NCBI GenBank assembly: GCA_904063045.1
Contig: CAJFCJ010000059.1
Coordinates: forward strand, 77,763 to 141,762
Length of the DNA stretch: 64,000 nt
Source of the DNA: Dimorphilus gyrociliatus
Lineage: Eukaryota > Animalia > Annelida
Reading direction: 5' to 3'
Shown here: positions 944 through 64,000 of the stretch, piece after piece
Position numbering within the stretch: the stretch's first letter is position 1
Layout: every line of letters starts with the position of its first letter
Position numbers and translations under genes: made by a program
The notes under the pieces: model-generated
Told to the model about the DNA's origin: nothing
Databases searched by the model: none
Seen by the model: only the letters and a program-made list of their open reading frames with translations

Positions 944-2217
944 AAGCAAGGTATATCAAAGAGGCTAATACAGTAACTCCGTATGGCTTAAATGAGGATC
1001 ATGGTTGCTACAGTACAACTATAGTACCACTAGTGGTCTACCATCCAAGTCCTTGGTATAAACTAAATAGAATACTTAAGGACCACTGGAGTGCTCTTAA
1101 TGATGACAGTCCACTGAAGGTGATTAGGCCTATTATTGCCTTGAAACCGGGGAGATCATTGGGTAGCCTTATAATAAAGGGAAGAACTGAAGGTCCACCT
1201 CAAGAGGATAATACCAACACTCTGAATCTAGTAGAATGTTGGCCATCCCCATGGTGGCATATTAAACAGTCTTCAATAAACCACATAACAAATTCTCTAT
1301 TGTGAATAACATAGAGAGCCTGGACAACAGCAATGACACAATTCTCACCATGGCCAATAGCTGGGTTGGGAATGATCAGGAGAGTAGTTTTGCAGGTATT
1401 AATCTCCTATTGGAGATACAGAGAGAAATTGACAGTGAATGAAAATTAATAGGGCTAGTTATTAGTTGAGTAGGGATTGAACACCTCTTTCATGGAGAAC
1501 AGGTTGTGGTAGTTGGCAGTGAACAAACAGTTCCCCAACAAAAACACCACATCTGGTTCTTATATCCTAACCCTAAGCTATAGCCCCCTAAAAAGATACA
1601 AATTAGTGAAAGTTTACAACTAACCCTAACCTAAGATAATGGAACCAACACTTAACTTTGCAGAGAGGAAGGTACAGACTGGATAGACATCAGACCTGTT
1701 CTGAACAATTGTTAAATAAAAAATGGGGTAATTTATGGGGAGACACCTCTCTATGAGAGAACAGATGGTTGACAGTTTAACATGGGTCTACTGACCTTAT
1801 GCTACATAGTACCCTAAGGATATATATATATCAATGAGTTAGTTTTGATCCAAAAAAATCAGTGCTGTGGCAAAAATGTCCCAAATCTGGGCCATTTAGG
1901 AGTTTCATTATGCATCATCCTAGATGTTTCAATTTTGTTGGAGGTGATAGAGCTCGAAAAGAGCTTTTCACTGATATCCTACACAACCATGTAGCTCTTA
2001 CAGTTCAGGAGTGGCTGAGCTTGGGAAATCGAAAATTTTCCAAGTTTGGGTAGAAAAATAAAAGATATTTTTTTTTATCTTTCTGACATAGGGGCAAGCT
2101 TGGATTCAAGTTTGAAAGCAATCTGACGATTTTGAAAAATTGGCCTTCACTGAGGCTCTGGACTTCTGAAAATCATTAATTTTGTAAGTTCATTGTCAGG
2201 TTAATTACCTGTTAAAA
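944..2217 (+). mobile_element. Old, 5'-truncated dispersed copy of the Penelope-like element found at 52110-64000 (end of EN, C-terminal segment, part of 3' UTR)
   Basis: Collinear with ~53564-55035 (e.g. NTVTPYGLNEDHGCYSTTIVPLVVYHPSPW), with a frameshift near 1265, two internal deletions and many CpG>TpG/CpA changes. Confidence 0.9.
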
Positions 2218-44306: not shown

Positions 44307-44639
44307 NNNNNNNNNNNNNNNNNNNNNNNNNNNNNNNNNNNNNNNNNNNNNNNNNNNNNNNNNNNNNNNNNNNNNNNNNNNNNNNNNNNNNNNNNNNNNN
44401 NNNNNNNNNNNNNNNNNNNNNNNNNNNNNNNNNNNNNNNNNNNNNNNNNNNNNNNNNNNNNNNNNNNNNNNNNNNNNNNNNNNNNNNNNNNNNNNNNNNN
44501 NNNNNNNNNNNNNNNNNNNNNNNNNNNNNNNNNNNNNNNNNNNNNNNNNNNNNNNNNNNNNNNNNNNNNNNNNNNNNNNNNNNNNNNNNNNNNNNNNNNN
44601 NNNNNNNNNNNNNNNNNNNNNNNNNNNNNNNNNNNNNNN
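44307..44639. other. Assembly gap (333 N)
   Basis: Run of N. Confidence 1.
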
Positions 44640-45206
44640 CCCAACCCCCTAACCTAACCTAACCTAACCTAACCCTAACCTAACCCTAACCCCTAACCTA
44701 ACCCTAACCCTAACCTAACCCTAACCTAACCTAACCTAACCCTAACCCTAACCCTAACCTAACCCTAACCCTAACCCTAACCTAACCCTAACCCTAACCC
44801 TAACCCTAACCTAACCCTAAACCTAACCCTAACCCTAACCCTAACCCTAACCCTAACCCCTAACCCTAACCCTAACCTAACCCTAACCCTAACCTAACCC
44901 TAACCCTAACCCTAACCTAACCTAACCCTAACCCTAACCCCTAACCCTAACCCCCTAACCCTAACCCTAACCCTAACCCTAACCCTAACCTAACCCTAAC
45001 CTAACCTAACCCTAACCCTAACCCTAACCCTAACCCTAACCCTAACCCTAACCCTAACCCTAACCTAACCCTAACCTAACCTAACCCTAACCCTAACCTA
45101 ACCCTAACCCTAACCCTAACCCTAACCCTAACCTAACCTAACCCTAACCTAACCTAACCCTAACCCTAACCCCTAACCCTAACCCTAAACCCTAACCTAA
45201 CCCTAA
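44640..45206 (+). repeat. Telomeric repeat array (CCCTAA)n with interspersed CCTAA variants; orientation places the chromosome end to the left
   Basis: About 570 bp of CCCTAA/CCTAA directly after the gap. Confidence 0.97.
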
Positions 45207-45484
45207 TTTTCTAACTTACATTCACCACACATTCAAAAATTCTAAACAACAGACAAATAAAAATAAAAACATGAAACATTTATCTTATAAACATCAAAGC
45301 AACAAAAGAGTTTCTCATGCAATGTAGAACTCAGTAAAACAACTATACAATCATCAAATACTTAGCTACAAACTCACAAACATCAATACAACCAAACAAT
45401 TTTTATGCAAGGCAGGACTCAGTTATAGAATTGATCTTAGCCTCCCTTTCAAAGGTAGCAGTAAGTGTAGCTATCTTCTAAAAA

Positions 45485-45534
45485 TGACCCTGATGAGTCT
45501 TTGCAAAAGGGGAAGACGAAACCATGGTAGGTCA
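45485..45534 (+). ncRNA. Minimal type I hammerhead ribozyme (first of 10 copies)
   Basis: UGACC-CUGAUGA-GUCUU(UGCAAAAGGGG)AAGAC-GAAAC-CAUG-GUA-GGUCA: stem I UGACC/GGUCA, stem II GUCUU/AAGAC, palindromic stem III ACCAUGGU, predicted cleavage after A45529. Other copies start at 46159, 46833, 47508, 48183, 49134, 49809, 50484, 51159 and 51834. Confidence 0.92.
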
Positions 45535-48500
45535 AAAATTCTTTGGCAATCATTTGAAAACTCAACACATTGATCAAAATAAAACATACATTCAACAAAA
45601 AAGTTCATTCTTCATAGTTGTACAAAAAGTTCTTACTCTTGCATTCCATCTTGGGATCTCCTGAAACTTTCGATGAAAGTTATTCGACTTTTGTCAGAAC
45701 TCAGATCTTAGTGTCTAGTTCAACATTATGAAAACCTAATCAGAAGTAAGGAGAGTCAAGAGGTTTGAGGAACAGTACAACTTGCACTTTACATCTCATC
45801 AACAAAAAATACAAACAAATTGAAACACAAACATAGATGCAATCATTTATTCAAATATTACAAAAATCAATATAAGACAATTTTCTAACTTACATTCACC
45901 ACACATTCAAAAATTCTAAACAACAGACAAATAAAAATAAAAACATGAAACATTTATCTTATAAACATCAAAGCAACAAAAGAGTTTCTCATGCAATGTA
46001 GAACTCAGTAAAACAACTATACAATCATCAAATACTTAGCTACAAACTCACAAACATCAATACAACCAAACAATTTTTATGCAAGGCAGGACTCAGTTAT
46101 AGAATTGATCTTAGCCTCCCTTTCAAAGGTAGCAGTAAGTGTAGCTATCTTCTAAAAATGACCCTGATGAGTCTTTGCAAAAGGGGAAGACGAAACCATG
46201 GTAGGTCAAAAATTCTTTGGCAATCATTTGAAAACTCAACACATTGATCAAAATAAAACATACATTCAACAAAAAAGTTCATTCTTCATAGTTGTACAAA
46301 AAGTTCTTACTCTTGCATTCCATCTTGGGATCTCCTGAAACTTTCGATGAAAGTTATTCGACTTTTGTCAGAACTCAGATCTTAGTGTCTAGTTCAACAT
46401 TATGAAAACCTAATCAGAAGTAAGGAGAGTCAAGAGGTTTGAGGAACAGTACAACTTGCACTTTACATCTCATCAACAAAAAATACAAACAAATTGAAAC
46501 ACAAACATAGATGCAATCATTTATTCAAATATTACAAAAATCAATATAAGACAATTTTCTAACTTACATTCACCACACATTCAAAAATTCTAAACAACAG
46601 ACAAATAAAAATAAAAACATGAAACATTTATCTTATAAACATCAAAGCAACAAAAGAGTTTCTCATGCAATGTAGAACTCAGTAAAACAACTATACAATC
46701 ATCAAATACTTAGCTACAAACTCACAAACATCAATACAACCAAACAATTTTTATGCAAGGCAGGACTCAGTTATAGAATTGATCTTAGCCTCCCTTTCAA
46801 AGGTAGCAGTAAGTGTAGCTATCTTCTAAAAATGACCCTGATGAGTCTTTGCAAAAGGGGAAGACGAAACCATGGTAGGTCAAAAATTCTTTGGCAATCA
46901 TTTGAAAACTCAACACATTGATCAAAATAAAACATACATTCAACAAAAAAGTTCATTCTTCATAGTTGTACAAAAAGTTCTTACTCTTGCATTCCATCTT
47001 GGGATCTCCTGAAACTTTCGATGAAAGTTATTCGACTTTTGTCAGAACTCAGATCTTAGTGTCTAGTTCAACATTATGAAAACCTAATCAGAAGTAAGGA
47101 GAGTCAAGAGGTTTGAGGAACAGTACAACTTGCACTTTACATCTCATCAACAAAAAAATACAAACAAATTGAAACACAAACATAGATGCAATCATTTATT
47201 CAAATATTACAAAAATCAATATAAGACAATTTTCTAACTTACATTCACCACACATTCAAAAATTCTAAACAACAGACAAATAAAAATAAAAACATGAAAC
47301 ATTTATCTTATAAACATCAAAGCAACAAAAGAGTTTCTCATGCAATGTAGAACTCAGTAAAACAACTATACAATCATCAAATACTTAGCTACAAACTCAC
47401 AAACATCAATACAACCAAACAATTTTTATGCAAGGCAGGACTCAGTTATAGAATTGATCTTAGCCTCCCTTTCAAAGGTAGCAGTAAGTGTAGCTATCTT
47501 CTAAAAATGACCCTGATGAGTCTTTGCAAAAGGGGAAGACGAAACCATGGTAGGTCAAAAATTCTTTGGCAATCATTTGAAAACTCAACACATTGATCAA
47601 AATAAAACATACATTCAACAAAAAAGTTCATTCTTCATAGTTGTACAAAAAGTTCTTACTCTTGCATTCCATCTTGGGATCTCCTGAAACTTTCGATGAA
47701 AGTTATTCGACTTTTGTCAGAACTCAGATCTTAGTGTCTAGTTCAACATTATGAAAACCTAATCAGAAGTAAGGAGAGTCAAGAGGTTTGAGGAACAGTA
47801 CAACTTGCACTTTACATCTCATCAACAAAAAAATACAAACAAATTGAAACACAAACATAGATGCAATCATTTATTCAAATATTACAAAAATCAATATAAG
47901 ACAATTTTCTAACTTACATTCACCACACATTCAAAAATTCTAAACAACAGACAAATAAAAATAAAAACATGAAACATTTATCTTATAAACATCAAAGCAA
48001 CAAAAGAGTTTCTCATGCAATGTAGAACTCAGTAAAACAACTATACAATCATCAAATACTTAGCTACAAACTCACAAACATCAATACAACCAAACAATTT
48101 TTATGCAAGGCAGGACTCAGTTATAGAATTGATCTTAGCCTCCCTTTCAAAGGTAGCAGTAAGTGTAGCTATCTTCTAAAAATGACCCTGATGAGTCTTT
48201 GCAAAAGGGGAAGACGAAACCATGGTAGGTCAAAAATTCTTTGGCAATCATTTGAAAACTCAACACATTGATCAAAATAAAACATACATTCAACAAAAAA
48301 GTTCATTCTTCATAGTTGTACAAAAAGTTCTTACTCTTGCATTCCATCTTGGGATCTCCTGAAACTTTCGATGAAAGTTATTCGACTTTTGTCAGAACTC
48401 AGATCTTAGTGTCTAGTTCAACATTATGAAAACCTAATCAGAAGTAAGGAGAGTCAAGAGGTTTGAGGAACAGTACAACTTGCACTTTACATCTCATCAA

Positions 48501-48760
48501 CAAAAAAATACAAACAAATTGAAACACAAACATAGATGCAATCATTTATTCAAATATTACAAAATCAATATAAGACAATTTTCTAACTTACATTCACCAC
48601 ACATTCAAAAATTCTAAACAACAGACAAATAAAAATAAAAACATGAAACATTTATCTTATAAACATCAAAGCAACAAAAGAGTTTCTCATGCAATGTAGA
48701 ACTCAGTAAAACAACTATACAATCATCAAATACTTAGCTACAAACTCACAAACATCAATA

Positions 48761-48863
<103 letters not shown>

Positions 48864-51800
48864 AATTACATTCACCACACATTCAAAAATTCTAAACAAC
48901 AGACAAATAAAAATAAAAACATGAAACATTTATCTTATAAACATCAAACAACAAAAGAGTTTCTCATGCAATGTAGAACTCAGTAAAACAACTATACAAT
49001 CATCAAATACTTAGCTACAAACTCACAAACATCAATACAACCAAACAATTTTTATGCAAGGCAGGACTCAGTTATAGAATTGATCTTAGCCTCCCTTTCA
49101 AAGGTAGCAGTAAGTGTAGCTATCTTCTAAAAATGACCCTGATGAGTCTTTGCAAAAGGGGAAGACGAAACCATGGTAGGTCAAAAATTCTTTGGCAATC
49201 ATTTGAAAACTCAACACATTGATCAAAATAAAACATACATTCAACAAAAAAGTTCATTCTTCATAGTTGTACAAAAAGTTCTTACTCTTGCATTCCATCT
49301 TGGGATCTCCTGAAACTTTCGATGAAAGTTATTCGACTTTTGTCAGAACTCAGATCTTAGTGTCTAGTTCAACATTATGAAAACCTAATCAGAAGTAAGG
49401 AGAGTCAAGAGGTTTGAGGAACAGTACAACTTGCACTTTACATCTCATCAACAAAAAAATACAAACAAATTGAAACACAAACATAGATGCAATCATTTAT
49501 TCAAATATTACAAAAATCAATATAAGACAATTTTCTAACTTACATTCACCACACATTCAAAAATTCTAAACAACAGACAAATAAAAATAAAAACATGAAA
49601 CATTTATCTTATAAACATCAAAGCAACAAAAGAGTTTCTCATGCAATGTAGAACTCAGTAAAACAACTATACAATCATCAAATACTTAGCTACAAACTCA
49701 CAAACATCAATACAACCAAACAATTTTTATGCAAGGCAGGACTCAGTTATAGAATTGATCTTAGCCTCCCTTTCAAAGGTAGCAGTAAGTGTAGCTATCT
49801 TCTAAAAATGACCCTGATGAGTCTTTGCAAAAGGGGAAGACGAAACCATGGTAGGTCAAAAATTCTTTGGCAATCATTTGAAAACTCAACACATTGATCA
49901 AAATAAAACATACATTCAACAAAAAAGTTCATTCTTCATAGTTGTACAAAAAGTTCTTACTCTTGCATTCCATCTTGGGATCTCCTGAAACTTTCGATGA
50001 AAGTTATTCGACTTTTGTCAGAACTCAGATCTTAGTGTCTAGTTCAACATTATGAAAACCTAATCAGAAGTAAGGAGAGTCAAGAGGTTTGAGGAACAGT
50101 ACAACTTGCACTTTACATCTCATCAACAAAAAAATACAAACAAATTGAAACACAAACATAGATGCAATCATTTATTCAAATATTACAAAAATCAATATAA
50201 GACAATTTTCTAACTTACATTCACCACACATTCAAAAATTCTAAACAACAGACAAATAAAAATAAAAACATGAAACATTTATCTTATAAACATCAAAGCA
50301 ACAAAAGAGTTTCTCATGCAATGTAGAACTCAGTAAAACAACTATACAATCATCAAATACTTAGCTACAAACTCACAAACATCAATACAACCAAACAATT
50401 TTTATGCAAGGCAGGACTCAGTTATAGAATTGATCTTAGCCTCCCTTTCAAAGGTAGCAGTAAGTGTAGCTATCTTCTAAAAATGACCCTGATGAGTCTT
50501 TGCAAAAGGGGAAGACGAAACCATGGTAGGTCAAAAATTCTTTGGCAATCATTTGAAAACTCAACACATTGATCAAAATAAAACATACATTCAACAAAAA
50601 AGTTCATTCTTCATAGTTGTACAAAAAGTTCTTACTCTTGCATTCCATCTTGGGATCTCCTGAAACTTTCGATGAAAGTTATTCGACTTTTGTCAGAACT
50701 CAGATCTTAGTGTCTAGTTCAACATTATGAAAACCTAATCAGAAGTAAGGAGAGTCAAGAGGTTTGAGGAACAGTACAACTTGCACTTTACATCTCATCA
50801 ACAAAAAAATACAAACAAATTGAAACACAAACATAGATGCAATCATTTATTCAAATATTACAAAAATCAATATAAGACAATTTTCTAACTTACATTCACC
50901 ACACATTCAAAAATTCTAAACAACAGACAAATAAAAATAAAAACATGAAACATTTATCTTATAAACATCAAAGCAACAAAAGAGTTTCTCATGCAATGTA
51001 GAACTCAGTAAAACAACTATACAATCATCAAATACTTAGCTACAAACTCACAAACATCAATACAACCAAACAATTTTTATGCAAGGCAGGACTCAGTTAT
51101 AGAATTGATCTTAGCCTCCCTTTCAAAGGTAGCAGTAAGTGTAGCTATCTTCTAAAAATGACCCTGATGAGTCTTTGCAAAAGGGGAAGACGAAACCATG
51201 GTAGGTCAAAAATTCTTTGGCAATCATTTGAAAACTCAACACATTGATCAAAATAAAACATACATTCAACAAAAAAGTTCATTCTTCATAGTTGTACAAA
51301 AAGTTCTTACTCTTGCATTCCATCTTGGGATCTCCTGAAACTTTCGATGAAAGTTATTCGACTTTTGTCAGAACTCAGATCTTAGTGTCTAGTTCAACAT
51401 TATGAAAACCTAATCAGAAGTAAGGAGAGTCAAGAGGTTTGAGGAACAGTACAACTTGCACTTTACATCTCATCAACAAAAAAATACAAACAAATTGAAA
51501 CACAAACATAGATGCAATCATTTATTCAAATATTACAAAAATCAATATAAGACAATTTTCTAACTTACATTCACCACACATTCAAAAATTCTAAACAACA
51601 GACAAATAAAAATAAAAACATGAAACATTTATCTTATAAACATCAAAGCAACAAAAGAGTTTCTCATGCAATGTAGAACTCAGTAAAACAACTATACAAT
51701 CATCAAATACTTAGCTACAAACTCACAAACATCAATACAACCAAACAATTTTTATGCAAGGCAGGACTCAGTTATAGAATTGATCTTAGCCTCCCTTTCA

Positions 51801-52080
51801 AAGGTAGCAGTAAGTGTAGCTATCTTCTAAAAATGACCCTGATGAGTCTTTGCAAAAGGGGAAGACGAAACCATGGTAGGTCAAAAATTCTTTGGCAATC
51901 ATTTGAAAACTCAACACATTGATCAAAATAAAACATACATTCAACAAAAAAGTTCATTCTTCATAGTTGTACAAAAAGTTCTTACTCTTGCATTCCATCT
52001 TGGGATCTCCTGAAACTTTCGATGAAAGTTATTCGACTTTTGTCAGAACTCAGATCTTAGTGTCTAGTTCAACATTATGA

Positions 52081-52110
52081 TAACCCTAACCCTAACCCTA
52101 ACCTAACCTA
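52081..52110 (+). repeat. Short telomeric tract between satellite and 5'-truncated PLE
   Basis: TAACCCTAACCCTAACCCTAACCTAACCTA. Confidence 0.95.
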
Positions 52111-52199
52111 AGGTCTCCTTTCCCATTTCAAAATCCAGACATTCTGAAATCATCTCCATCCTCTCCAACCTCAACAAGGAGGACTTCCTTACAAATAGG

Positions 52200-54062
52200 A
52201 TGATGAAAAAGCTTAGCCCAAAATTAGAAGCCACAGATAGGTATTTTTATCTTCTCCCAAAGATTCATAAGGAAAGGTGGACAATCCCTAATAGGATGCC
52301 ACCAGGGAGACCAGTTGTTTGTTACAGAGGGAGTGATTTACACCCTCTCTCCTGTTGGTTAGATGCTTGGCTACAACCATTGGCTATGGTGTGTAGAGCA
52401 TACACTAAAAATGCACAGGATATCTGCAGACACCTCTCCTCTATACATATAGAGGAGAATACAATTATACAAACTGCAGATGTAGATGCCCTATACCCTA
52501 GCATTGATCCTGATTGGGGACTACAATGCATAGCCAAACAACTGTACAACTGGCCAAAAGATAATAGACCAGATGAGGCTATCCTTAAACTTTTGCAGAT
52601 CTGCCTAAAAAGCAATGACTTTGTATTTGAAGGTGAAAGATACTTGCAAATAAAAGGCACTGCAATGGGAGTTAGCTTTAGTCCAGCTTATGCAAATATA
52701 GTCCTAGGGGTTTGGGAGGAGGATGTATATACCATCTACAAAGAACACCTATTAGTGTATAGAAGGTACATTGATGATATACTCATTGTGTGGAGAAAGG
52801 AGAGTAGTGATACTGTAGGAGAGGATGACAGGTTGAGAGAGTTCTGGAACTATCTTAACAACAGAAATGAGGGTATTAGTCTAACCAGATCTGAGGCTGG
52901 TAACACAACCATCTTTCTAGATTTGGAGATTCAACTCAATCCTCTAGTGTTCAAAACTCATTTTAAACCTACAGACAGTAGAAGACTACTTAACCCCAAG
53001 TCTGCACATCCCAAACACACCATTAAAGGAATTTTATTTGCACAAGCTCTTAGGTATCTCAGAAATTGCTCAAAAATTGATACAGCAAAGGGACAACTCA
53101 ATGATCTTAGGAATTTAAACAAAGATCTGGGCTATACCAAATCAATGTTCAAAGAGGCATGGCTAAAAGCCACTAAGAGGATTGAAATTGAGAGGCAAGA
53201 ATTTGAAGGTATGAAACCATGCAATGGTAGGAGATGCCTAGTGTGTCTGAAGGTTAGGAAAACTAACACATGGCAATCAACTGGCAGCAACCAATGGTTC
53301 AGAGTCAAGGGAGACTTTGACTGTACCTCTAGTTGGATAATTTACATTATCCAATGTACCCTATGTGAAATACAGTATGTGGGTCTTACCACTAGAACTC
53401 TAAGAGATAGGATCAACAACCATAAAGGGGATGTGAGGAATGGATCCAATAAATTGGTCTCTGATCATTTTCGAAAACATGGAATAGATCAGATGACTTA
53501 CTGGGTCTGTGATTCCATTCCTGAGGAAGATCCTAACAGAGAGAAGACCCTACAGACTTTGGAAGCAAGGTACATCAAAGAGGCTAACACAGTTACTCCG
53601 TATGGCTTAAATGAGGATCATGGTTGCTACAGTACTACTATAGTACCACTGGTTGTCTACCATCCAAGTCCTTGGTATAAATTAAATAGAATACTCAAGG
53701 ACCACTGGAGTGCTCTTAATGATGACAGTCCATTGAAAGCGATTAGGCCTATTATTGCCTTGAAACTGGGGAGATCATTGGGTAGCCTTATAGTAAAGGG
53801 AAGAACTGAAGGTCCACCTCAAGAGGATAATACCAACACTCTGAATCTATTAGAATGTTGGCCATCCCCATGGTGGCATATTAAAACAGTCTTCAATAAA
53901 CCACAAAACAAATTCTCTATTGTGAATAACATAGAGAGCCTGGACAACAGCAATGACACAATTCTCACCATGGCCAATAGCTGGGTGGGGGATGATCAGG
54001 ATAGTAGTTTTGCAGGTATTAATCTCCTATTGGAGATACAGAGAGAAATTGACAGTGAATGA
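52200..54062 (+). CDS. PLE RT + GIY-YIG endonuclease, 5'-truncated copy 1
   Basis: Identical to residues 235-854 of 57028..59592. Confidence 0.9.
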   Translation: MMKKLSPKLEATDRYFYLLPKIHKERWTIPNRMPPGRPVVCYRGSDLHPLSCWLDAWLQPLAMVCRAYTKNAQDICRHLSSIHIEENTIIQTADVDALYPSIDPDWGLQCIAKQLYNWPKDNRPDEAILKLLQICLKSNDFVFEGERYLQIKGTAMGVSFSPAYANIVLGVWEEDVYTIYKEHLLVYRRYIDDILIVWRKESSDTVGEDDRLREFWNYLNNRNEGISLTRSEAGNTTIFLDLEIQLNPLVFKTHFKPTDSRRLLNPKSAHPKHTIKGILFAQALRYLRNCSKIDTAKGQLNDLRNLNKDLGYTKSMFKEAWLKATKRIEIERQEFEGMKPCNGRRCLVCLKVRKTNTWQSTGSNQWFRVKGDFDCTSSWIIYIIQCTLCEIQYVGLTTRTLRDRINNHKGDVRNGSNKLVSDHFRKHGIDQMTYWVCDSIPEEDPNREKTLQTLEARYIKEANTVTPYGLNEDHGCYSTTIVPLVVYHPSPWYKLNRILKDHWSALNDDSPLKAIRPIIALKLGRSLGSLIVKGRTEGPPQEDNTNTLNLLECWPSPWWHIKTVFNKPQNKFSIVNNIESLDNSNDTILTMANSWVGDDQDSSFAGINLLLEIQREIDSE

Positions 54063-56047
54063 AAATTAATAGGGCTAGTTATTGGCTGAGTAAGGATTGA
54101 ACACCTCTTTAATGGGGAACAGGTTGTGGTAGTTGGCAGTGAACAAACAGTTCCCCAACAAAAACACCACATCTGGTTCTTATATCCTAACCCTAAGCTA
54201 TAGCCCCCTAAAAAGATACAAATTAGTGAAACTTTACAACTAACCCTAACCTAAGATAATGGAACCAACACTTAACTCAGCAGAGAAGAAGGTACAGACT
54301 GGACAGACATGGGACCTGTTCTGAACAATTGTTAAATAATAAAAAATGGGGCAATTTGTGGGGAGACACCTCTCTATGAGAGAACAGATGGTTGACAGTT
54401 GGCAGTGAACAAAAGTTCCCCAACAAAAGGTCCCTTCTGGTTTCCCAATCAACACAAAGACAACCCATTGACAATCATACATGAGCAGTCTAATGTAACC
54501 ATAACCTCTACCTTCAACCATCTCTCAGTGTATTCCTTACATACAGGAACAAGTGTGTCTGATATATATAAGGGGTTGAAAATTTAACATGGGTCTACAG
54601 ACCTTATGCTACATAGTACCCTAAGGATATATATATCAATGAGTTAGTTTTGATCCAAAAAAATCAGTGATGTGACAAAAATGTCCCAAATCTGGGCCGT
54701 TTAGGAGTTTCGTTATGCGTCATCCTAGACGTTTCAATTTTGTTGGAGGTGATAGAGCTCGAAAAGAGCTTTTCACTGATATGCTACACGACCATGTAGC
54801 TCTTACGGTTCAGGAGTGGCTGAGCTTCGAAAATCGAAAATTTTCCGAGTTCGGGTAGAAAAATAAAAATCTTTTTTTCTATCTTTCCGACGTAGGGGCA
54901 AGCTTGGATTCAAGTTTGAAAGCAATCCGACGATTTTGAAAAATTGGCCTTCACTGAGGCTCTGGACTTGTAAAGATTTCGCGAAAATCATTAATTTTCT
55001 AAGTTCATTGTCATGTTAATTACCTGTAAAAACGTTACATTCGCCTGGGTACTTAGAAAGATTTTGGAAAAAATATTTTCCGAAAATATTCTAAGTCCAG
55101 CCTAACACAGTGTTAGGTTTTGGACTTAGAAAAATTTCGACTGAAAAAAAGTCGATAAATTTTTCAAAAATATTCTAAGTCCAAATTGGAGGTGAAATCA
55201 CCCCTTATCTTAGATTCAGTTATATTTCATGGTGCGGTAATGAATAGGGCTCTGGACCGCCCCATGCAAATAGGATTGGCCATATATGTACAGAGGAAGG
55301 AACATAGAATTGAATCTAGGTCTTCTTCTGTTACATTTTATGAAAAGTGACTTACCTGATTGTTATACCTGCGATTTTTGAAAGGTTACCCTCTAATTAC
55401 TATAGAACGTAGGGTCGAGATACTGGTAATAGAGTCTAAGGCTGCCAGTCAGCCATCCTCACCTACCACCGTTAACTTCAAAGCTCCATAGCTCCGCAAC
55501 CGCTGGGCCGATTTCGTTCAAATTTTGCACAGTTGCTCAGTTCAATTAGATCTAGCACTGTGTAAAATTTCATAACGATCGGAGCAAGTTGAAATTTCAA
55601 CTTTCGTCAGTGGTCGACTTGCTTTACTGACCACCAAATAGGTGATTTGTTGCGAGATAAAGTGTGGGATTGACCCAGTACCTATCCTAAGGTATAGTAA
55701 GCCTCTCAGAGATCAGTCTGGTGGCAATCTAACCAGCCACTTTTCCCCTCTCACTTGATAAAGGAGGAATACCTCCGAAATATTGTGAGTTTTAATCTGG
55801 TGACATTTTGTTAGTTGCTAAATACAGGTTCTCTTCACCCTTGTGGAGAATTTGTAAGTGGTTTCGTTGGAGATACAGTTACAGCTTAGGCTGGGGAATT
55901 GCTACTCAAGATAGCAACTCCTCAACAGCTACACCAACCCCTAGCCAAAGCTTGGTTATAAGTGTGAGTGCACTTTTGGGATTACCAGTCTGTACTGATT
56001 GTGCTAATCCCTAACCCCAAGACCTAACCCAGCCAGAACCTTTAACC

Positions 56048-57019
56048 ATGGCAGAGGGAAGTGGTGATGCTAATGCTACATCCAACAACAACCAACCAAG
56101 TACCAGTGGCAACACTGGAAAACACTATAAAGGCAAATTGGATGGAGTAAACAAACAATTGGTTAACTCCATATTTGGCTTATACAGGATGAGACATCAT
56201 CCAAATAGTATGGCCAACAGTAACCCCTTTCAAAAGAAGGTAGAAGGCCTTCTTAAAGATATCCACCCTGCAGGTGGGCCATTACCCAAAGAGAGACAGG
56301 ATATCCTTGTCCAACAAGGTAAAGAATTGGCCAACACCATTAGAGAGCAACTCCTGCAGGAGTACAAGGTAAGAGGGGAGTCAGCACAAAACTCTGTGCA
56401 AACTCTATCCTCTAAAATAACTGGCAACTTACAAACTCTTGTTGGGATAGCCTTAAAATATTGCCAAATGAGGTTTAAAAGAAAGTTCCAAGAAGATACT
56501 TGGAAAGACATTCTTAAAGAATTAAACCTTCCTTGCAATGATGAAGGAGTAACCAATAAGAAAAGGAGAAGAGTAAGTAGTCAGGAAGGAGGAGGAGAAC
56601 AAAGGAAGGAGAAAAAGAGTAAAAACAAAAAGAGGAAGACCAAGAACAAAGGGGGTCAACCCCCTAAGTCTGAGTCTTCTTCTAGGAATCCTTCAGCACC
56701 CCCTCAATGCCAAACTACAGAAGAGGATATCAAAAAGATTGTTAAAGATAGTCTAGGCGAAGAATTAGCCAAACTAAAAGTAGAGATGATGGACATGTTA
56801 AAAAGTACACTGGCTGGACAAGGTAGTGGTAGTAATACTCCATCCACAAATCATGGTGATACTACACCAGTGGTGGAGAAAATACAAATCCAGACCAGGT
56901 CCCAGGCAGTTGCTAACAAGTCCAGCAGATCTCTATCTGAATCTTCCTCCAGTACTGTCAACAAAACAGGAAGGAGGAATTTAAACAATCTAGAAAGGGG
57001 AAAACCCAAGCCAAAATAG
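56048..57019 (+). CDS. PLE ORF1, 323 aa, basic/low-complexity protein with a Lys-rich NLS-like stretch
   Basis: ATG-initiated open frame repeated in copy 3 (61577...); NKKRRRV and RKEKKSKNKKRKTKNK; no recognisable family. Confidence 0.75.
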   Translation: MAEGSGDANATSNNNQPSTSGNTGKHYKGKLDGVNKQLVNSIFGLYRMRHHPNSMANSNPFQKKVEGLLKDIHPAGGPLPKERQDILVQQGKELANTIREQLLQEYKVRGESAQNSVQTLSSKITGNLQTLVGIALKYCQMRFKRKFQEDTWKDILKELNLPCNDEGVTNKKRRRVSSQEGGGEQRKEKKSKNKKRKTKNKGGQPPKSESSSRNPSAPPQCQTTEEDIKKIVKDSLGEELAKLKVEMMDMLKSTLAGQGSGSNTPSTNHGDTTPVVEKIQIQTRSQAVANKSSRSLSESSSSTVNKTGRRNLNNLERGKPKPK

Positions 57020-57027
57020 ATAGGAAC

Positions 57028-59592
57028 TTGGAGCACTCTAACAATTGTGCCAATCCAGTTCATTTGTACAGCAATGACTATAATGGTATTAATCATAGCA
57101 TAGATAGTAGAGATAGTTTGCTTTTAAACTATTCAGATTGGAATGTTCCTGATCCAGTCATTCAGACCTTGAATAAAGGTCTGAAATACATTAATATTGA
57201 TTACAAATCCACCAGGAAACAGTGGATCACTAAGAATTGGAAAGAGGGATTAGCATCCTTCCTACATAGACTAGTGAAACACAAAGATGTGGGTCCCTTT
57301 ACTTATAGGGTAAACCCCTTTGCTAAAGTGAGTCAAACTGACAAGACCATTATAAAGGAAGATCCTCCAATAGATGGAGAAGATACCCCAGTATGGAATG
57401 ATTTCAAGAATAACATATGGAATAAAGGTTGTGAAACCATAAATGGGTTGAGTGAAAGGTATGGCTACCTTCACCAAAATGGTCCTAGTTCAAGATTTCA
57501 AACATCTGTTGAAACAGTCTGCAACAAAGATGATATCATCATTAAACCTGCAGACAAAGGCAACAATATTGTTATCTTGAACAAAAGAGACTATTTAATA
57601 GAGGCCAACAGACAACTGTCTGATAACAACACCTACAAAAAGGTCTCCTTTCCCATTTCAAAATCCAGACATTCTGAAATCATCTCCATCCTCTCCAACC
57701 TCAACAAGGAGGACTTCCTTACAAATAGGATGATGAAAAAGCTTAGCCCAAAATTAGAAGCCACAGATAGGTATTTTTATCTTCTCCCAAAGATTCATAA
57801 GGAAAGGTGGACAATCCCTAATAGGATGCCACCAGGGAGACCAGTTGTTTGTTACAGAGGGAGTGATTTACACCCTCTCTCCTGTTGGTTAGATGCTTGG
57901 CTACAACCATTGGCTATGGTGTGTAGAGCATACACTAAAAATGCACAGGATATCTGCAGACACCTCTCCTCTATACATATAGAGGAGAATACAATTATAC
58001 AAACTGCAGATGTAGATGCCCTATACCCTAGCATTGATCCTGATTGGGGACTACAATGCATAGCCAAACAACTGTACAACTGGCCAAAAGATAATAGACC
58101 AGATGAGGCTATCCTTAAACTTTTGCAGATCTGCCTAAAAAGCAATGACTTTGTATTTGAAGGTGAAAGATACTTGCAAATAAAAGGCACTGCAATGGGA
58201 GTTAGCTTTAGTCCAGCTTATGCAAATATAGTCCTAGGGGTTTGGGAGGAGGATGTATATACCATCTACAAAGAACACCTATTAGTGTATAGAAGGTACA
58301 TTGATGATATACTCATTGTGTGGAGAAAGGAGAGTAGTGATACTGTAGGAGAGGATGACAGGTTGAGAGAGTTCTGGAACTATCTTAACAACAGAAATGA
58401 GGGTATTAGTCTAACCAGATCTGAGGCTGGTAACACAACCATCTTTCTAGATTTGGAGATTCAACTCAATCCTCTAGTGTTCAAAACTCATTTTAAACCT
58501 ACAGACAGTAGAAGACTACTTAACCCCAAGTCTGCACATCCCAAACACACCATTAAAGGAATTTTATTTGCACAAGCTCTTAGGTATCTCAGAAATTGCT
58601 CAAAAATTGATACAGCAAAGGGACAACTCAATGATCTTAGGAATTTAAACAAAGATCTGGGCTATACCAAATCAATGTTCAAAGAGGCATGGCTAAAAGC
58701 CACTAAGAGGATTGAAATTGAGAGGCAAGAATTTGAAGGTATGAAACCATGCAATGGTAGGAGATGCCTAGTGTGTCTGAAGGTTAGGAAAACTAACACA
58801 TGGCAATCAACTGGCAGCAACCAATGGTTCAGAGTCAAGGGAGACTTTGACTGTACCTCTAGTTGGATAATTTACATTATCCAATGTACCCTATGTGAAA
58901 TACAGTATGTGGGTCTTACCACTAGAACTCTAAGAGATAGGATCAACAACCATAAAGGGGATGTGAGGAATGGATCCAATAAATTGGTCTCTGATCATTT
59001 TCGAAAACATGGAATAGATCAGATGACTTACTGGGTCTGTGATTCCATTCCTGAGGAAGATCCTAACAGAGAGAAGACCCTACAGACTTTGGAAGCAAGG
59101 TACATCAAAGAGGCTAACACAGTTACTCCGTATGGCTTAAATGAGGATCATGGTTGCTACAGTACTACTATAGTACCACTGGTTGTCTACCATCCAAGTC
59201 CTTGGTATAAATTAAATAGAATACTCAAGGACCACTGGAGTGCTCTTAATGATGACAGTCCATTGAAAGCGATTAGGCCTATTATTGCCTTGAAACTGGG
59301 GAGATCATTGGGTAGCCTTATAGTAAAGGGAAGAACTGAAGGTCCACCTCAAGAGGATAATACCAACACTCTGAATCTATTAGAATGTTGGCCATCCCCA
59401 TGGTGGCATATTAAAACAGTCTTCAATAAACCACAAAACAAATTCTCTATTGTGAATAACATAGAGAGCCTGGACAACAGCAATGACACAATTCTCACCA
59501 TGGCCAATAGCTGGGTGGGGGATGATCAGGATAGTAGTTTTGCAGGTATTAATCTCCTATTGGAGATACAGAGAGAAATTGACAGTGAATGA
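57028..59592 (+). CDS. PLE ORF2: N-terminal region, RT, Zn-finger + GIY-YIG EN, displaced linker segment, C-terminal tail
   Basis: LNKGLKY; IIIKPADKGNNIV; YLLPKIHK...PGRPVV; TADVDALYPSI; LQIKGTAMG; YRRYIDDIL; HFKPTD...HPKH; KPCNGRRCLVC; CTSSWIIYIIQCTLCEIQYVGLT..LRDRINNH; HF..H; GLNED. The frame is open from 56941 but its first ATG is at 57730. Confidence 0.95.
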   Translation: MEHSNNCANPVHLYSNDYNGINHSIDSRDSLLLNYSDWNVPDPVIQTLNKGLKYINIDYKSTRKQWITKNWKEGLASFLHRLVKHKDVGPFTYRVNPFAKVSQTDKTIIKEDPPIDGEDTPVWNDFKNNIWNKGCETINGLSERYGYLHQNGPSSRFQTSVETVCNKDDIIIKPADKGNNIVILNKRDYLIEANRQLSDNNTYKKVSFPISKSRHSEIISILSNLNKEDFLTNRMMKKLSPKLEATDRYFYLLPKIHKERWTIPNRMPPGRPVVCYRGSDLHPLSCWLDAWLQPLAMVCRAYTKNAQDICRHLSSIHIEENTIIQTADVDALYPSIDPDWGLQCIAKQLYNWPKDNRPDEAILKLLQICLKSNDFVFEGERYLQIKGTAMGVSFSPAYANIVLGVWEEDVYTIYKEHLLVYRRYIDDILIVWRKESSDTVGEDDRLREFWNYLNNRNEGISLTRSEAGNTTIFLDLEIQLNPLVFKTHFKPTDSRRLLNPKSAHPKHTIKGILFAQALRYLRNCSKIDTAKGQLNDLRNLNKDLGYTKSMFKEAWLKATKRIEIERQEFEGMKPCNGRRCLVCLKVRKTNTWQSTGSNQWFRVKGDFDCTSSWIIYIIQCTLCEIQYVGLTTRTLRDRINNHKGDVRNGSNKLVSDHFRKHGIDQMTYWVCDSIPEEDPNREKTLQTLEARYIKEANTVTPYGLNEDHGCYSTTIVPLVVYHPSPWYKLNRILKDHWSALNDDSPLKAIRPIIALKLGRSLGSLIVKGRTEGPPQEDNTNTLNLLECWPSPWWHIKTVFNKPQNKFSIVNNIESLDNSNDTILTMANSWVGDDQDSSFAGINLLLEIQREIDSE

Positions 59593-61576
59593 AAATTAAT
59601 AGGGCTAGTTATTGGCTGAGTAAGGATTGAACACCTCTTTAATGGGGAACAGGTTGTGGTAGTTGGCAGTGAACAAACAGTTCCCCAACAAAAACACCAC
59701 ATCTGGTTCTTATATCCTAACCCTAAGCTATAGCCCCCTAAAAAGATACAAATTAGTGAAACTTTACAACTAACCCTAACCTAAGATAATGGAACCAACA
59801 CTTAACTCAGCAGAGAAGAAGGTACAGACTGGACAGACATGGGACCTGTTCTGAACAATTGTTAAATAATAAAAAATGGGGCAATTTGTGGGGAGACACC
59901 TCTCTATGAGAGAACAGATGGTTGACAGTTGGCAGTGAACAAAAGTTCCCCAACAAAAGGTCCCTTCTGGTTTCCCAATCAACACAAAGACAACCCATTG
60001 ACAATCATACATGAGCAGTCTAATGTAACCATAACCTCTACCTTCAACCATCTCTCAGTGTATTCCTTACATACAGGAACAAGTGTGTCTGATATATATA
60101 AGGGGTTGAAAATTTAACATGGGTCTACAGACCTTATGCTACATAGTACCCTAAGGATATATATATCAATGAGTTAGTTTTGATCCAAAAAAATCAGTGA
60201 TGTGACAAAAATGTCCCAAATCTGGGCCGTTTAGGAGTTTCGTTATGCGTCATCCTAGACGTTTCAATTTTGTTGGAGGTGATAGAGCTCGAAAAGAGCT
60301 TTTCACTGATATGCTACACGACCATGTAGCTCTTACGGTTCAGGAGTGGCTGAGCTTCGAAAATCGAAAATTTTCCGAGTTCGGGTAGAAAAATAAAAAT
60401 CTTTTTTTCTATCTTTCCGACGTAGGGGCAAGCTTGGATTCAAGTTTGAAAGCAATCCGACGATTTTGAAAAATTGGCCTTCACTGAGGCTCTGGACTTG
60501 TAAAGATTTCGCGAAAATCATTAATTTTCTAAGTTCATTGTCATGTTAATTACCTGTAAAAACGTTACATTCGCCTGGGTACTTAGAAAGATTTTGGAAA
60601 AAATATTTTCCGAAAATATTCTAAGTCCAGCCTAACACAGTGTTAGGTTTTGGACTTAGAAAAATTTCGACTGAAAAAAAGTCGATAAATTTTTCAAAAA
60701 TATTCTAAGTCCAAATTGGAGGTGAAATCACCCCTTATCTTAGATTCAGTTATATTTCATGGTGCGGTAATGAATAGGGCTCTGGACCGCCCCATGCAAA
60801 TAGGATTGGCCATATATGTACAGAGGAAGGAACATAGAATTGAATCTAGGTCTTCTTCTGTTACATTTTATGAAAAGTGACTTACCTGATTGTTATACCT
60901 GCGATTTTTGAAAGGTTACCCTCTAATTACTATAGAACGTAGGGTCGAGATACTGGTAATAGAGTCTAAGGCTGCCAGTCAGCCATCCTCACCTACCACC
61001 GTTAACTTCAAAGCTCCATAGCTCCGCAACCGCTGGGCCGATTTCGTTCAAATTTTGCACAGTTGCTCAGTTCAATTAGATCTAGCACTGTGTAAAATTT
61101 CATAACGATCGGAGCAAGTTGAAATTTCAACTTTCGTCAGTGGTCGACTTGCTTTACTGACCACCAAATAGGTGATTTGTTGCGAGATAAAGTGTGGGAT
61201 TGACCCAGTACCTATCCTAAGGTATAGTAAGCCTCTCAGAGATCAGTCTGGTGGCAATCTAACCAGCCACTTTTCCCCTCTCACTTGATAAAGGAGGAAT
61301 ACCTCCGAAATATTGTGAGTTTTAATCTGGTGACATTTTGTTAGTTGCTAAATACAGGTTCTCTTCACCCTTGTGGAGAATTTGTAAGTGGTTTCGTTGG
61401 AGATACAGTTACAGCTTAGGCTGGGGAATTGCTACTCAAGATAGCAACTCCTCAACAGCTACACCAACCCTAGCCAAAGCTTGGTTATAAGTGTGAGTGC
61501 ACTTTTGGGATTACCAGTCTGTACTGATTGTGCTAATCCCTAACCCCAAGACCTAACCCAGCCAGAACCTTTAACC

Positions 61577-64000
61577 ATGGCAGAGGGAAGTGGTGATGCT
61601 AATGCTACATCCAACAACAACCAACCAAGTACCAGTGGCAACACTGGAAAACACTATAAAGGCAAATTGGATGGAGTAAACAAACAATTGGTTAACTCCA
61701 TATTTGGCTTATACAGGATGAGACATCATCCAAATAGTATGGCCAACAGTAACCCCTTTCAAAAGAAGGTAGAAGGCCTTCTTAAAGATATCCACCCTGC
61801 AGGTGGGCCATTACCCAAAGAGAGACAGGATATCCTTGTCCAACAAGGTAAAGAATTGGCCAACACCATTAGAGAGCAACTCCTGCAGGAGTACAAGGTA
61901 AGAGGGGAGTCAGCACAAAACTCTGTGCAAACTCTATCCTCTAAAATAACTGGCAACTTACAAACTCTTGTTGGGATAGCCTTAAAATATTGCCAAATGA
62001 GGTTTAAAAGAAAGTTCCAAGAAGATACTTGGAAAGACATTCTTAAAGAATTAAACCTTCCTTGCAATGATGAAGGAGTAACCAATAAGAAAAGGAGAAG
62101 AGTAAGTAGTCAGGAAGGAGGAGGAGAACAAAGGAAGGAGAAAAAGAGTAAAAACAAAAAGAGGAAGACCAAGAACAAAGGGGGTCAACCCCCTAAGTCT
62201 GAGTCTTCTTCTAGGAATCCTTCAGCACCCCTCAATGCCAAACTACAGAAGAGGATATCAAAAAGATTGTTAAAGATAGTCTAGGCGAAGAATTAGCCAA
62301 ACTAAAAGTAGAGATGATGGACATGTTAAAAAGTACACTGGCTGGACAAGGTAGTGGTAGTAATACTCCATCCACAAATCATGGTGATACTACACCAGTG
62401 GTGGAGAAAATACAAATCCAGACCAGGTCCCAGGCAGTTGCTAACAAGTCCAGCAGATCTCTATCTGAATCTTCCTCCAGTACTGTCAACAAAACAGGAA
62501 GGAGGAATTTAAACAATCTAGAAAGGGGAAAACCCAAGCCAAAATAGATAGGAACTTGGAGCACTCTAACAATTGTGCCAATCCAGTTCATTTGTACAGC
62601 AATGACTATAATGGTATTAATCATAGCATAGATAGTAGAGATAGTTTGCTTTTAAACTATTCAGATTGGAATGTTCCTGATCCAGTCATTCAGACCTTGA
62701 ATAAAGGTCTGAAATACATTAATATTGATTACAAATCCACCAGGAAACAGTGGATCACTAAGAATTGGAAAGAGGGATTAGCATCCTTCCTACATAGACT
62801 AGTGAAACACAAAGATGTGGGTCCCTTTACTTATAGGGTAAACCCCTTTGCTAAAGTGAGTCAAACTGACAAGACCATTATAAAGGAAGATCCTCCAATA
62901 GATGGAGAAGATACCCAGTATGGAATGATTTCAAGAATAACATATGGAATAAAGGTTGTGAAACCATAAATGGGTTGAGTGAAAGGTATGGCTACCTTCA
63001 CCAAAATGGTCCTAGTTCAAGATTTCAAACATCTGTTGAAACAGTCTGCAACAAAGATGATATCATCATTAAACCTGCAGACAAAGGCAACAATATTGTT
63101 ATCTTGAACAAAAGAGACTATTTAATAGAGGCCAACAGACAACTGTCTGATAACAACACCTACAAAAAGGTCTCCTTTCCCATTTCAAAATCCAGACATT
63201 CTGAAATCATCTCCATCCTCTCCAACCTCAACAAGGAGGACTTCCTTACAAATAGGATGATGAAAAAGCTTAGCCCAAAATTAGAAGCCACAGATAGGTA
63301 TTTTTATCTTCTCCCAAAGATTCATAAGGAAAGGTGGACAATCCCTAATAGGATGCCACCAGGGAGACCAGTTGTTTGTTACAGAGGGAGTGATTTACAC
63401 CCTCTCTCCTGTTGGTTAGATGCTTGGCTACAACCATTGGCTATGGTGTGTAGAGCATACACTAAAAATGCACAGGATATCTGCAGACACCTCTCCTCTA
63501 TACATATAGAGGAGAATACAATTATACAAACTGCAGATGTAGATGCCCTATACCCTAGCATTGATCCTGATTGGGGACTACAATGCATAGCCAAACAACT
63601 GTACAACTGGCCAAAGATAATAGACCAGATGAGGCTATCCTTAAACTTTTGCAGATCTGCCTAAAAAGCAATGACTTTGTATTTGAAGGTGAAAGATACT
63701 TGCAAATAAAAGGCACTGCAATGGGAGTTAGCTTTAGTCCAGCTTATGCAAATATAGTCCTAGGGTTTGGGAGGAGGATGTATATACATCTACAAAGAAC
63801 ACCTATTAGTGTATAGAAGTACATTGATGATATACTCATTGTGTGGAGAAAGGAGAGTAGTGATACTGTAGGAGAGGATGACAGGTTGAGAGAGTTCTGG
63901 AACTATCTTAACAACAGAATGAGGGTATTAGTCTAACCAGATCTGAGGCTGGTAACACAACCATCTTTCTAGATTTGGAGATTCAACTCAATCCTCTAGT
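61577..64000 (+). pseudogene. Third PLE copy (ORF1 and RT N-half) with frameshifts, possibly consensus errors
   Basis: Same sequence as copy 2 apart from single-base deletions (e.g. ~62228, ~62918, ~63615, ~63765). Confidence 0.8.

What the first reader, a model, noticed from the sequence alone, without database searches (positions are those of the whole stretch)
58700..59592. Internally permuted PLE protein: the GIY-YIG endonuclease lies upstream of the thumb/linker segment that normally precedes it
Seen: the order is RT, GYTKSMFKEAWLKA, KPCNGRRCLVC...GIY-YIG...GLNED, then IVPLVVYHPSPWYKLNRILKDHWSALNDDSPLKAIRPIIALKLGRSLGSLIVK, then an ~85-aa tail. Known (recalled consensus): in Neptune/Poseidon-type PLEs the segment PLVxxY(H/N)P...I.K.W.IL..D..L...P..A.....L..LLV lies between the thumb and the Cys linker, and the protein ends shortly after GLN.D. 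Here that segment follows the nuclease, so EN appears inserted into the RT C-terminal region. The same order occurs in copies 1 and 2 and in the old dispersed copy (944-1441), so it is not an assembly error. It differs from both the canonical C-terminal EN and the N-terminal EN (Naiad/Chlamys) architectures as I recall them.
Basis: partly seen in the sequence, partly recalled or inferred. Interest (0 to 1): 0.85.

Follow-up and report, generated by a model that had tools for sequence, protein, structure and literature searches.

The report
Penelope retroelement with nuclease moved inward
This Penelope-like retrotransposon places its GIY-YIG nuclease between the reverse-transcriptase thumb and a conserved ~60-residue module that normally comes before the nuclease; this real, third domain order is shared by many uncharacterised relatives and seems to have arisen more than once.

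Summary
ORF2 (57028-59592, 854 aa) reads N-terminal domain, RT, helical thumb, Cys linker, GIY-YIG nuclease, then a ~60-aa module I call X (residues 712-779), then a 75-aa tail.

X is homologous to the segment between thumb and nuclease in canonical elements:
- A profile built only from post-nuclease tails hits 51 of 52 canonical proteins exactly in the thumb-to-nuclease gap.
- The reverse profile hits the query at 712-779 (30 bits).
- hhalign gives 98.2% probability, E 4e-14. Shuffled and reversed controls give no hits.
- No protein carries two X copies.

Independent contigs from two organisms bridge both junctions, so this is not an assembly error.

The order is not peculiar to this element. 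Of the 150 nearest relatives, 72 have it, 58 have the canonical order, and two N-terminal-nuclease proteins end with thumb-X. The conserved core is therefore RT-thumb-X, and the nuclease cassette sits in one of three places.

On an RT tree the two C-terminal orders are interleaved, and monophyly is rejected (AU p 0.0005). One tight clade (RT 57-61% identical) contains all three arrangements.

The papers I could read describe only N-terminal or C-terminal nucleases. I rate it a new variant of a known kind, of moderate to high interest.

The scan noted the same order on another piece of this genome (s1-081403).

The parts
56048..57019 (+). ORF1 (323 aa), with no significant family match
   Evidence: Upstream ORF1s also precede ORF2 in related loci.
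56941..57027 (+). ORF2 frame already open here, -1 relative to ORF1 and overlapping its end. There is no ATG near the start of ORF2.
   Evidence: frames 1 and 0, and the ORF2 frame is open from 56941.
57028..59592 (+). ORF2, the 854-aa PLE polyprotein with the rearranged order
   Evidence: The AlphaFold model has pLDDT 83.4 and pTM 0.82. The top PDB fold match is TERT 3du5.
57505..58527 (+). N-terminal DKG motif (ADKGNN, aa 175-180) and RT fingers/palm (about aa 160-500; YIDD at 424-427)
   Evidence: Pfam RVT_1 at 317-437 scores 26.5 bits, below the 29.6 cut-off. Invariant columns D328, D426 and D427. Motif positions.
58543..58722 (+). Thumb, three helices at aa 506-565
   Evidence: Secondary structure of the model. 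Weak DUF7599 hit at 524-563. Relatives carry a precomputed PF26215 HTH_animal annotation.
58750..59163 (+). Nuclease cassette: Cys linker C575-x4-C580-x2-C583 plus the GIY-YIG domain, with CCHH and the catalytic R638, H642, E689 and N705
   Evidence: Pfam GIY-YIG 3.7e-7 at 613-698. Invariant and near-invariant columns.
59161..59364 (+). Module X (aa 712-779), a beta-alpha-beta-alpha unit homologous to the canonical thumb-to-nuclease segment
   Evidence: In the model: E714-721, H726-738, E749-756, H761-765, pLDDT 79-90.
59365..59592 (+). Lineage-specific tail (aa 780-854) and stop codon. It is mostly predicted disordered, has a terminal helix at 837-853, and is shared only with P0002.
52110..54062 (+). 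5'-truncated tandem copy with the same order (100% identical)
61577..64000 (+). Next tandem copy (99.7% identical), cut by the window end
944..1442 (+). Old dispersed 3' fragment (96.2% identical, frameshifted) running from the nuclease end through X into the tail

Best explanation
This is an endonuclease-positive Penelope-like retrotransposon. Its GIY-YIG cassette (Cys linker plus nuclease, about 140 aa) sits as an internal domain between the RT thumb and a conserved ~60-aa module, X. In canonical elements X directly follows the thumb and precedes the nuclease. The invariant core of these proteins is N-domain, RT, thumb, X. The nuclease cassette is a separable module found in three places: at the N-terminus, after X (canonical), or between thumb and X (here). 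The internal arrangement is a common, functional variant and has been reached or swapped more than once. Shown: the order, the homology of X, the absence of a second X, the wide occurrence, the non-monophyly on the RT tree, and intact catalytic residues. Inferred: the element still moves by target-primed reverse transcription, with the nuclease held on short linkers while X docks back onto the RT/thumb body. Also inferred: the rearrangements arise by template switching or partial duplication and deletion within the tandem arrays typical of these elements.
For: Order and intact frame.

The 150 nearest relatives are bimodal. Either the thumb-to-nuclease gap is 0-25 aa with a 41-153 aa tail, or the gap is 55-136 aa with no tail. 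HMM classification gives 72 versus 58.

Homology of X: a tail-only profile hits 51 of 52 canonical proteins inside the thumb-to-nuclease gap, with E down to 3e-15 at Z=1e6. A linker-only profile hits the query at 712-779 (30.1 bits) and 46 of 66 tails. hhalign gives 98.2%, E 4e-14. There were 0 hits in 612 shuffled or reversed controls.

X ends the protein right after the thumb in the N-terminal-nuclease proteins P0045 and P0049. The P0049 locus shows a start codon at the Cys linker and a stop after X.

The RT tree interleaves the two orders, and the AU test rejects monophyly (delta lnL 224.6, p 0.0005).

P0052 (internal), P0048 (canonical) and P0049 (N-terminal) have RTs 57-61% identical. Their nucleases and X modules are also nearest each other's clade. 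All three were verified on contigs.

Both AlphaFold models fold X as the same beta-alpha-beta-alpha unit with high confidence. Catalytic columns are conserved. Independent contigs bridge the junctions.
Against: I could not inspect model coordinates, so the claim that X packs on the thumb in both orders is untested. Apart from the Dimorphilus protein, all relatives with the internal order come from unnamed metagenome or Logan assemblies, so host range and named clade are unknown. The RT tree is a quick LG+G4 search and deep branches may be unreliable. The nuclease tree is unresolved. Recombination between lineages, rather than repeated rearrangement, could explain part of the interleaving: P0013 looks like an RT from one group joined to X and a nuclease from the other. 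Some proteins that appear to lack a nuclease and end at X are cut by contig ends (P0124). No hammerhead ribozyme was detected in the inter-ORF region.
Confidence: 0.82

Rival explanations
1. There was no rearrangement. Ancestors with RT-thumb-X and no nuclease acquired the nuclease cassette independently at different sites. The internal order would then record separate insertion events rather than movement of X or of the nuclease within an existing element.
For: X stays attached to the thumb whenever the nuclease is elsewhere. Craig 2021 already proposes multiple nuclease acquisitions or exchanges. One nuclease-less relative lies in a 24-kb contig with no nuclease gene called downstream.
Against: In the P0048/P0049/P0052 clade, RT, nuclease and X all find their nearest relatives within the same clade whatever the order. 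This favours reshuffling of the element's own cassette. The G-x3-C...GLN cassette boundaries are the same in all three positions.
Confidence: 0.25
2. The order is already standard and known for a named clade, for example Nematis or part of the paraphyletic Neptune group. It would be visible in published supplementary alignments or Repbase entries and simply filed under 'C-terminal EN+'.
For: The arrangement is very common among relatives: 72 of 150, and 22 of 116 in a second search. Neptune is paraphyletic and Nematis has a 'reduced' linker according to Craig 2021. I could not read Arkhipova 2006, Gladyshev 2007 or any supplement.
Against: No readable paper mentions a conserved module after the nuclease or a nuclease internal to the RT C-terminal region. 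A 2026 preprint still summarises the known variation as nuclease upstream or downstream of RT. No model in the local Pfam copy matches X.
Confidence: 0.3
3. The resemblance is chance or convergence, or the order is an assembly or gene-model artefact of tandem arrays.
For: Single-sequence matches of the query segment are weak, with E from 0.002 to 10. These elements sit in tandem arrays that confuse assemblers.
Against: Profile tests are highly significant with clean controls. The frame is continuous in three copies. Independent contigs bridge both junctions. Seventy other proteins and two verified loci show the same order. A circular permutation of canonical units cannot create a direct thumb-to-nuclease junction.
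Confidence: 0.02

Closest known systems
Neptune-type C-terminal EN+ Penelope-like elements (Arkhipova 2006; Craig et al. 2021, PMC8557442)
   Same: DKG motif, PLE/TERT-like RT, helical thumb, CX2-5CxxC linker immediately before a GIY-YIG nuclease with internal CCHH, and tandem arrays with pseudo-LTRs.
   Different: In canonical relatives the order is thumb, X, Cys linker, nuclease, stop. Here it is thumb, Cys linker, nuclease, X, then a 75-aa tail. This element also has an upstream ORF1 in the +1 frame relative to ORF2.
Naiad/Chlamys N-terminal EN+ PLEs (Craig et al. 2021)
   Same: They are a precedent for the GIY-YIG cassette occupying another position relative to RT. The Cys linker and CCHH are shared with Naiads. 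N-terminal-nuclease relatives found here end with thumb-X.
   Different: The nuclease is not N-terminal here. I did not check for a CxC motif or an IFD.
Poseidon_Ac (PAc) of Anolis, the biochemically characterised PLE (PMC11167929)
   Same: N-terminal nucleic-acid-binding region, RT and GIY-YIG nuclease in one polyprotein. It is the model for nicking and target-primed reverse transcription.
   Different: PAc is described with a C-terminal nuclease and belongs to Penelope/Poseidon, which lacks the Cys linker. I did not examine PAc for X.
Telomerase reverse transcriptase (for example Tribolium TERT, PDB 3du5)
   Same: It is the best solved-structure match of both models (E about 2e-9 to 2e-10), in line with the known PLE-TERT kinship.
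   Different: It has no nuclease. I did not test whether TERT has an equivalent of X.

Membership tests
Penelope-like elements, EN+ | PLE/TERT-like reverse transcriptase with the N-terminal DKG motif | tested here: met
   ADKGNN at aa 175-180 and YIDD at 424-427. 19,976 homologues, 1,129 of them at E<=1e-30. TERT is the top PDB fold match. Pfam RVT_1 scores only 26.5 bits, below its 29.6 cut-off.
Penelope-like elements, EN+ | GIY-YIG nuclease in the same ORF, with catalytic R, H, E and N and the internal CCHH | tested here: met
   Pfam GIY-YIG 30.8 bits against a 22.6 cut-off, at aa 613-698. C620, H657 and N705 are invariant; C623, R638, H642 and E689 are at least 90% conserved.
Penelope-like elements, EN+ | Tandem or partial-tandem copies forming pseudo-LTRs, with 5'-truncated copies | tested here: met
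   Copies at 52110-54062, 56048-59592 and 61577-64000, plus the 3' fragment at 944-1442.
Penelope-like elements, EN+ | Hammerhead ribozyme in the pseudo-LTR | tested here: inconclusive
   No Rfam hit at gathering score in 44000-64000, and none at E<=1 in 59500-61650. Minimal or dimeric PLE hammerheads may escape these models.
Neptune clade | CX2-5CxxC Zn-finger-like linker directly upstream of the nuclease | tested here: met
   C575-x4-C580-x2-C583. C575 and C580 are invariant and C583 is at least 90% conserved in alignment A1.
Neptune clade | Placement with named Neptune references on an RT tree | not testable with these tools
   No named reference sequences could be obtained: supplements are not held and the protein sources carry no family names.
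Canonical C-terminal EN architecture | Nuclease is the last domain and the protein ends within a few residues of the GLN motif | tested here: not met
   The nuclease ends at aa 712 and 142 residues follow. In canonical relatives the tail is about 0.
Canonical C-terminal EN architecture | Module X lies between the thumb and the nuclease | tested here: not met
   The thumb-to-linker gap is 4 aa and X lies at 712-779, after the nuclease.
Naiad/Chlamys | N-terminal nuclease | tested here: not met
   The nuclease lies at aa 575-712 of 854.
Hydra clade | DKT instead of DKG, no CCHH, CxCX5C linker (Craig 2021) | tested here: not met
   The query has DKG, CCHH and CX4CxxC.

The most novel reading that the evidence does not exclude
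PLE polyproteins are built from a fixed core (N-domain, RT, thumb and a so far undescribed C-terminal module X) plus a GIY-YIG cassette that has repeatedly relocated among three positions: the N-terminus, between thumb and X, and after X. Relocation has happened even within lineages whose RTs are about 60% identical. 'N-terminal' versus 'C-terminal' nuclease would then be a labile character rather than a deep clade-defining one.
Probability: 0.5. Interest if true: 0.75.

Novelty: new variant of a known kind. Interest (0 to 1): 0.6.

Why it matters
PLE classification and the debate on how these elements acquired their nuclease rest on two recognised layouts, nuclease before RT or after it.

A third layout that is common and apparently recurrent shows the nuclease is a movable cassette. 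It also defines a conserved module (X) that belongs to the RT side and has not been described in the papers I could read.

For annotation, pipelines that expect the nuclease at the very C-terminus will mis-trim these proteins.

For structure, three permitted insertion points predict that the N-terminus, the thumb/X junction and the C-terminus of X lie close together on the folded enzyme. They also predict that the cassette's own ends are adjacent.

For evolution, the pattern gives a testable case of domain reshuffling driven by tandem arrays and template switching.

Tried and rejected
- Local Pfam on the tail alone and on relatives found nothing covering X. The precomputed list order PF00078, PF28514, PF01541, PF26215 looked at first as if HTH_animal followed the nuclease. 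It is identical for canonical proteins, and PF26215 is the thumb, so that lead was dropped.
- I tried to name the hosts or clade of the internal-order group by cluster look-up, two further homologue searches, the ESM Atlas and AFDB Foldseek, whose organism names were masked. Only Dimorphilus gyrociliatus is named. The named fish proteins are canonical.
- The nuclease-only tree was too poorly resolved to test congruence with the RT tree.
- Proteins that lack a nuclease and end at X were considered as proof that X belongs to the RT side. One is merely cut by its contig end and another gave no DNA. I therefore rely on the N-terminal-nuclease loci instead.
- Foldseek against the PDB returned only RT-level matches and says nothing about X.
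- Arkhipova 2006 and Gladyshev 2007 are not held.
- Rfam found no hammerhead.
Full report
**What is there.** The right end of the window holds a head-to-tail array of one element. There is a 5'-truncated copy at 52110-54062, a full copy at 56048-59592 and a third copy from 61577 to the window end. These are 99.7-100% identical. An older 3' fragment at 944-1442 is 96.2% identical and frameshifted.

Each full unit has ORF1 (56048-57019, 323 aa, no significant family) and ORF2 (57028-59592, 854 aa). The ORF2 frame is open from 56941 and is -1 relative to ORF1. ORF2 is 98-99% identical to DgyrCDS14716 of Dimorphilus gyrociliatus, so the window is very probably from that annelid.

**Check of the observation.**
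- DKG motif at aa 175-180 and YIDD at 424-427.
- Three thumb helices at 506-565, with GYTKSMFKEAWLKA at 545-558.
- Cys linker C575-x4-C580-x2-C583.
- GIY-YIG at 613-698 (Pfam 30.8 bits, cut-off 22.6), and YGLNED at 702-707.
- IVPLVVYHP at 715-723, then about 130 more residues to the stop.

Contigs assembled from public runs bridge thumb to linker (58549-58774) and linker, nuclease and segment (58745-59388) in one organism. A second organism label, about 95-97% identical, bridges nuclease to segment (59056-59388). A protein 45-62% identical from another source (P0002) has the same order, including the extra tail. The order is real.

**Is the post-nuclease segment the canonical pre-nuclease segment?** An exhaustive HMMER search gave 19,976 homologues, and I analysed the best 150. 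I measured the distance from thumb end to nuclease start, and from nuclease end to the C-terminus. The result is sharply bimodal:
- Either the gap is 0-25 aa and a tail of 41-153 aa follows the nuclease.
- Or the gap is 55-136 aa and the protein ends with the nuclease.

Read by eye, the tails and the gaps carry the same pattern. A strand (I-P-x-V) comes first, then a helix, then A-Y-x-R-N-x-N-L-K-D-x-L-V-x-x-K-L.

The formal tests agree:
- A profile built only from tails hits 51 of 52 canonical proteins, always inside the thumb-to-nuclease gap, with E down to 3e-15 for a nominal database of one million.
- A profile built only from canonical gaps hits the query at 712-779 (30.1 bits, 1.6e-5) and 46 of 66 tails.
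- hhalign of the two alignments gives probability 98.2%, E 4e-14, over 60 columns.
- 612 reversed or shuffled control sequences give no hit.
- The query segment against P0099 alone gives 25% identity, E 3e-6.
- No protein has two copies of the module.

I call the module X.

**What X belongs to.** Two relatives with an N-terminal nuclease (P0045, P0049) end with X directly after the thumb. The P0049 contig shows an upstream ORF1. Its ORF2 starts with a start codon right at the Cys linker, runs through nuclease, N-domain, RT, thumb and X, and then stops. X therefore stays with the RT and thumb when the nuclease is elsewhere.

Twelve proteins lack a nuclease and end at X. At least one of them is cut by its contig end. 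Another lies in a 24-kb contig with no nuclease gene called downstream, but no DNA was available to check it. I give this group little weight.

The consistent picture is a core of N-domain, RT, thumb and X, plus a cassette that runs from G-x3-C of the linker to the GLN motif. The cassette occupies one of three places. This element has it between thumb and X.

**Structure.** AlphaFold2 with family alignments gave confident models.
- The query (pLDDT 83.4, pTM 0.82) folds X as strand 714-721, helix 726-738, strand 749-756 and helix 761-765, at pLDDT 79-90. Residues 774-819 are disordered and there is a terminal helix at 837-853.
- A canonical relative, P0099 (pLDDT 94.2), folds its X as the same strand-helix-strand-helix unit straight after the thumb. 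A lower-confidence spacer then leads to the nuclease.

Both models match TERT best among solved structures. I could not read coordinates, so whether X occupies the same position on the thumb in both orders is inferred, not shown.

**How common, and how often.** By HMM classification the 150 nearest relatives, together with the query and two other session proteins (153 in all), split as follows:

| Arrangement | Count |
|---|---|
| Internal order (thumb, nuclease, X), the query included | 72 |
| Canonical order (thumb, X, nuclease) | 58 |
| N-terminal nuclease (two of them with X) | 3 |
| X but no nuclease | 12 |
| Nuclease but X not detected | 6 |

Three of the six 'X not detected' proteins (P0088, P0113, P0123) lie in a clade otherwise made of internal-order proteins. 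A profile search added 22 more internal-order proteins and 94 canonical ones.

On an RT tree of 121 rows (quick search, LG+G4) the two C-terminal orders are clustered but interleaved. Well-supported branches force at least seven changes for the internal order. An AU test rejects a tree that holds all internal-order rows together (delta lnL 224.6, p 0.0005).

The clearest case is one clade in which the RTs of P0052 (internal), P0048 (canonical) and P0049 (N-terminal) are 57-61% identical. Their nucleases and X modules also find their nearest relatives within that clade. All three arrangements were verified on contigs with starts and stops.

P0013, in contrast, has an RT nearest to internal-order proteins but an X and nuclease nearest to canonical ones. 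That looks like recombination. The nuclease tree alone is unresolved.

The character has therefore changed more than once, by rearrangement, by recombination, or by both. The query itself sits in a small all-internal clade with P0002, P0004 and P0005 (support 99-100).

**How it most likely works.** Catalytic and structural residues of RT and nuclease are conserved. The copies are nearly identical, and read depth indicates many copies. The protein is therefore probably active.

By analogy with the characterised Poseidon element of Anolis (PMC11167929), the nuclease nicks AT-rich DNA and the RT extends from the nick on the element's RNA. In this variant the nuclease would be a nested domain on two short linkers (about 566-575 and 706-714), with X returning to the RT body. 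These steps are inferred.

The origin of the rearrangement is also inferred. Tandem arrays, read-through transcripts and the internal initiation and template switching documented for these elements give the opportunity. Duplication of X-nuclease followed by two losses is the classical route.

**Comparison with what is known.** The linker (CX4CxxC), CCHH and DKG fit a Neptune-like element. They exclude Hydra, which has DKT, no CCHH and CxCX5C, and Naiad/Chlamys, which have an N-terminal nuclease. Clade membership could not be tested for lack of named references.

The readable literature describes the nuclease as either C-terminal or N-terminal. It mentions no conserved module after the thumb and no nuclease internal to it. 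No model in the local Pfam copy matches X. I could not read Arkhipova 2006, Gladyshev 2007 or any supplementary alignment. I therefore leave about a 30% chance that specialists already know this layout under the label 'C-terminal EN+'.

**Verdict.** The thumb helices did not move. The layout is a widespread variant, not a peculiarity of this element. It is a new variant of a known kind, and its main value is what it says about the modularity of PLE proteins. The scan's first readers flagged the same nested order on another piece of this genome (s1-081403). I did not examine that copy.

Noticed in passing
window 56941-57027: The ORF2 frame is open 79 nt before the ORF1 stop and is -1 relative to ORF1. 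There is no ATG near the ORF2 start, so a frameshift or another non-canonical way of expressing ORF2 is likely. ORF1-ORF2 pairs also occur in related loci: L001 (overlapping ATGA), L002 and L004.
   Followed up: partly
window 45130-51950: A satellite with a 674-675 bp period, at least 11 copies mostly 100% identical, with strong negative GC skew. It directly abuts the PLE array.
   Followed up: no
window 59329 and 59359 (loose ends of run contigs): Contigs of run X1 join 5'-truncated copies of the element (from 59329) to TTAGG/TTAGGG-like repeats. Other truncated copies start at 59359 in three runs. This suggests many truncated insertions, some next to telomere-like repeats.
   Followed up: no
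P0127 residues 2266-2385: A 2,396-aa predicted protein carries an 87-92% identical copy of the nuclease end, X and tail at its C-terminus. It is probably a PLE 3' fragment swallowed by a host gene model.
   Followed up: no
L001:79-666, L002:308-1474, L004:3-1169: The ORF1s of the P0048/P0049/P0052 lineage share a region that looks SGNH/OSK-like by eye. Pfam gave only a non-significant OSK hit (E 0.09), so this is unconfirmed. The window's own ORF1 is unrelated and basic/serine-rich.
   Followed up: partly
window 60647-60715: A hairpin-like stretch in the inter-ORF region gives weak miRNA-precursor-type Rfam hits on both strands (E 0.3-0.5). No hammerhead ribozyme was found in this region.
   Followed up: no
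run X6 on window 58400-58486 and 59307-59486: A coral metatranscriptome holds contigs 93-97% similar to parts of this ORF2. This points to a close relative of the element, or of the annelid, in that sample.
   Followed up: no
window 4258-6405: A long ORF with a retroviral-type aspartic protease context (gag-pol-like), belonging to a separate LTR-type element upstream.
   Followed up: no
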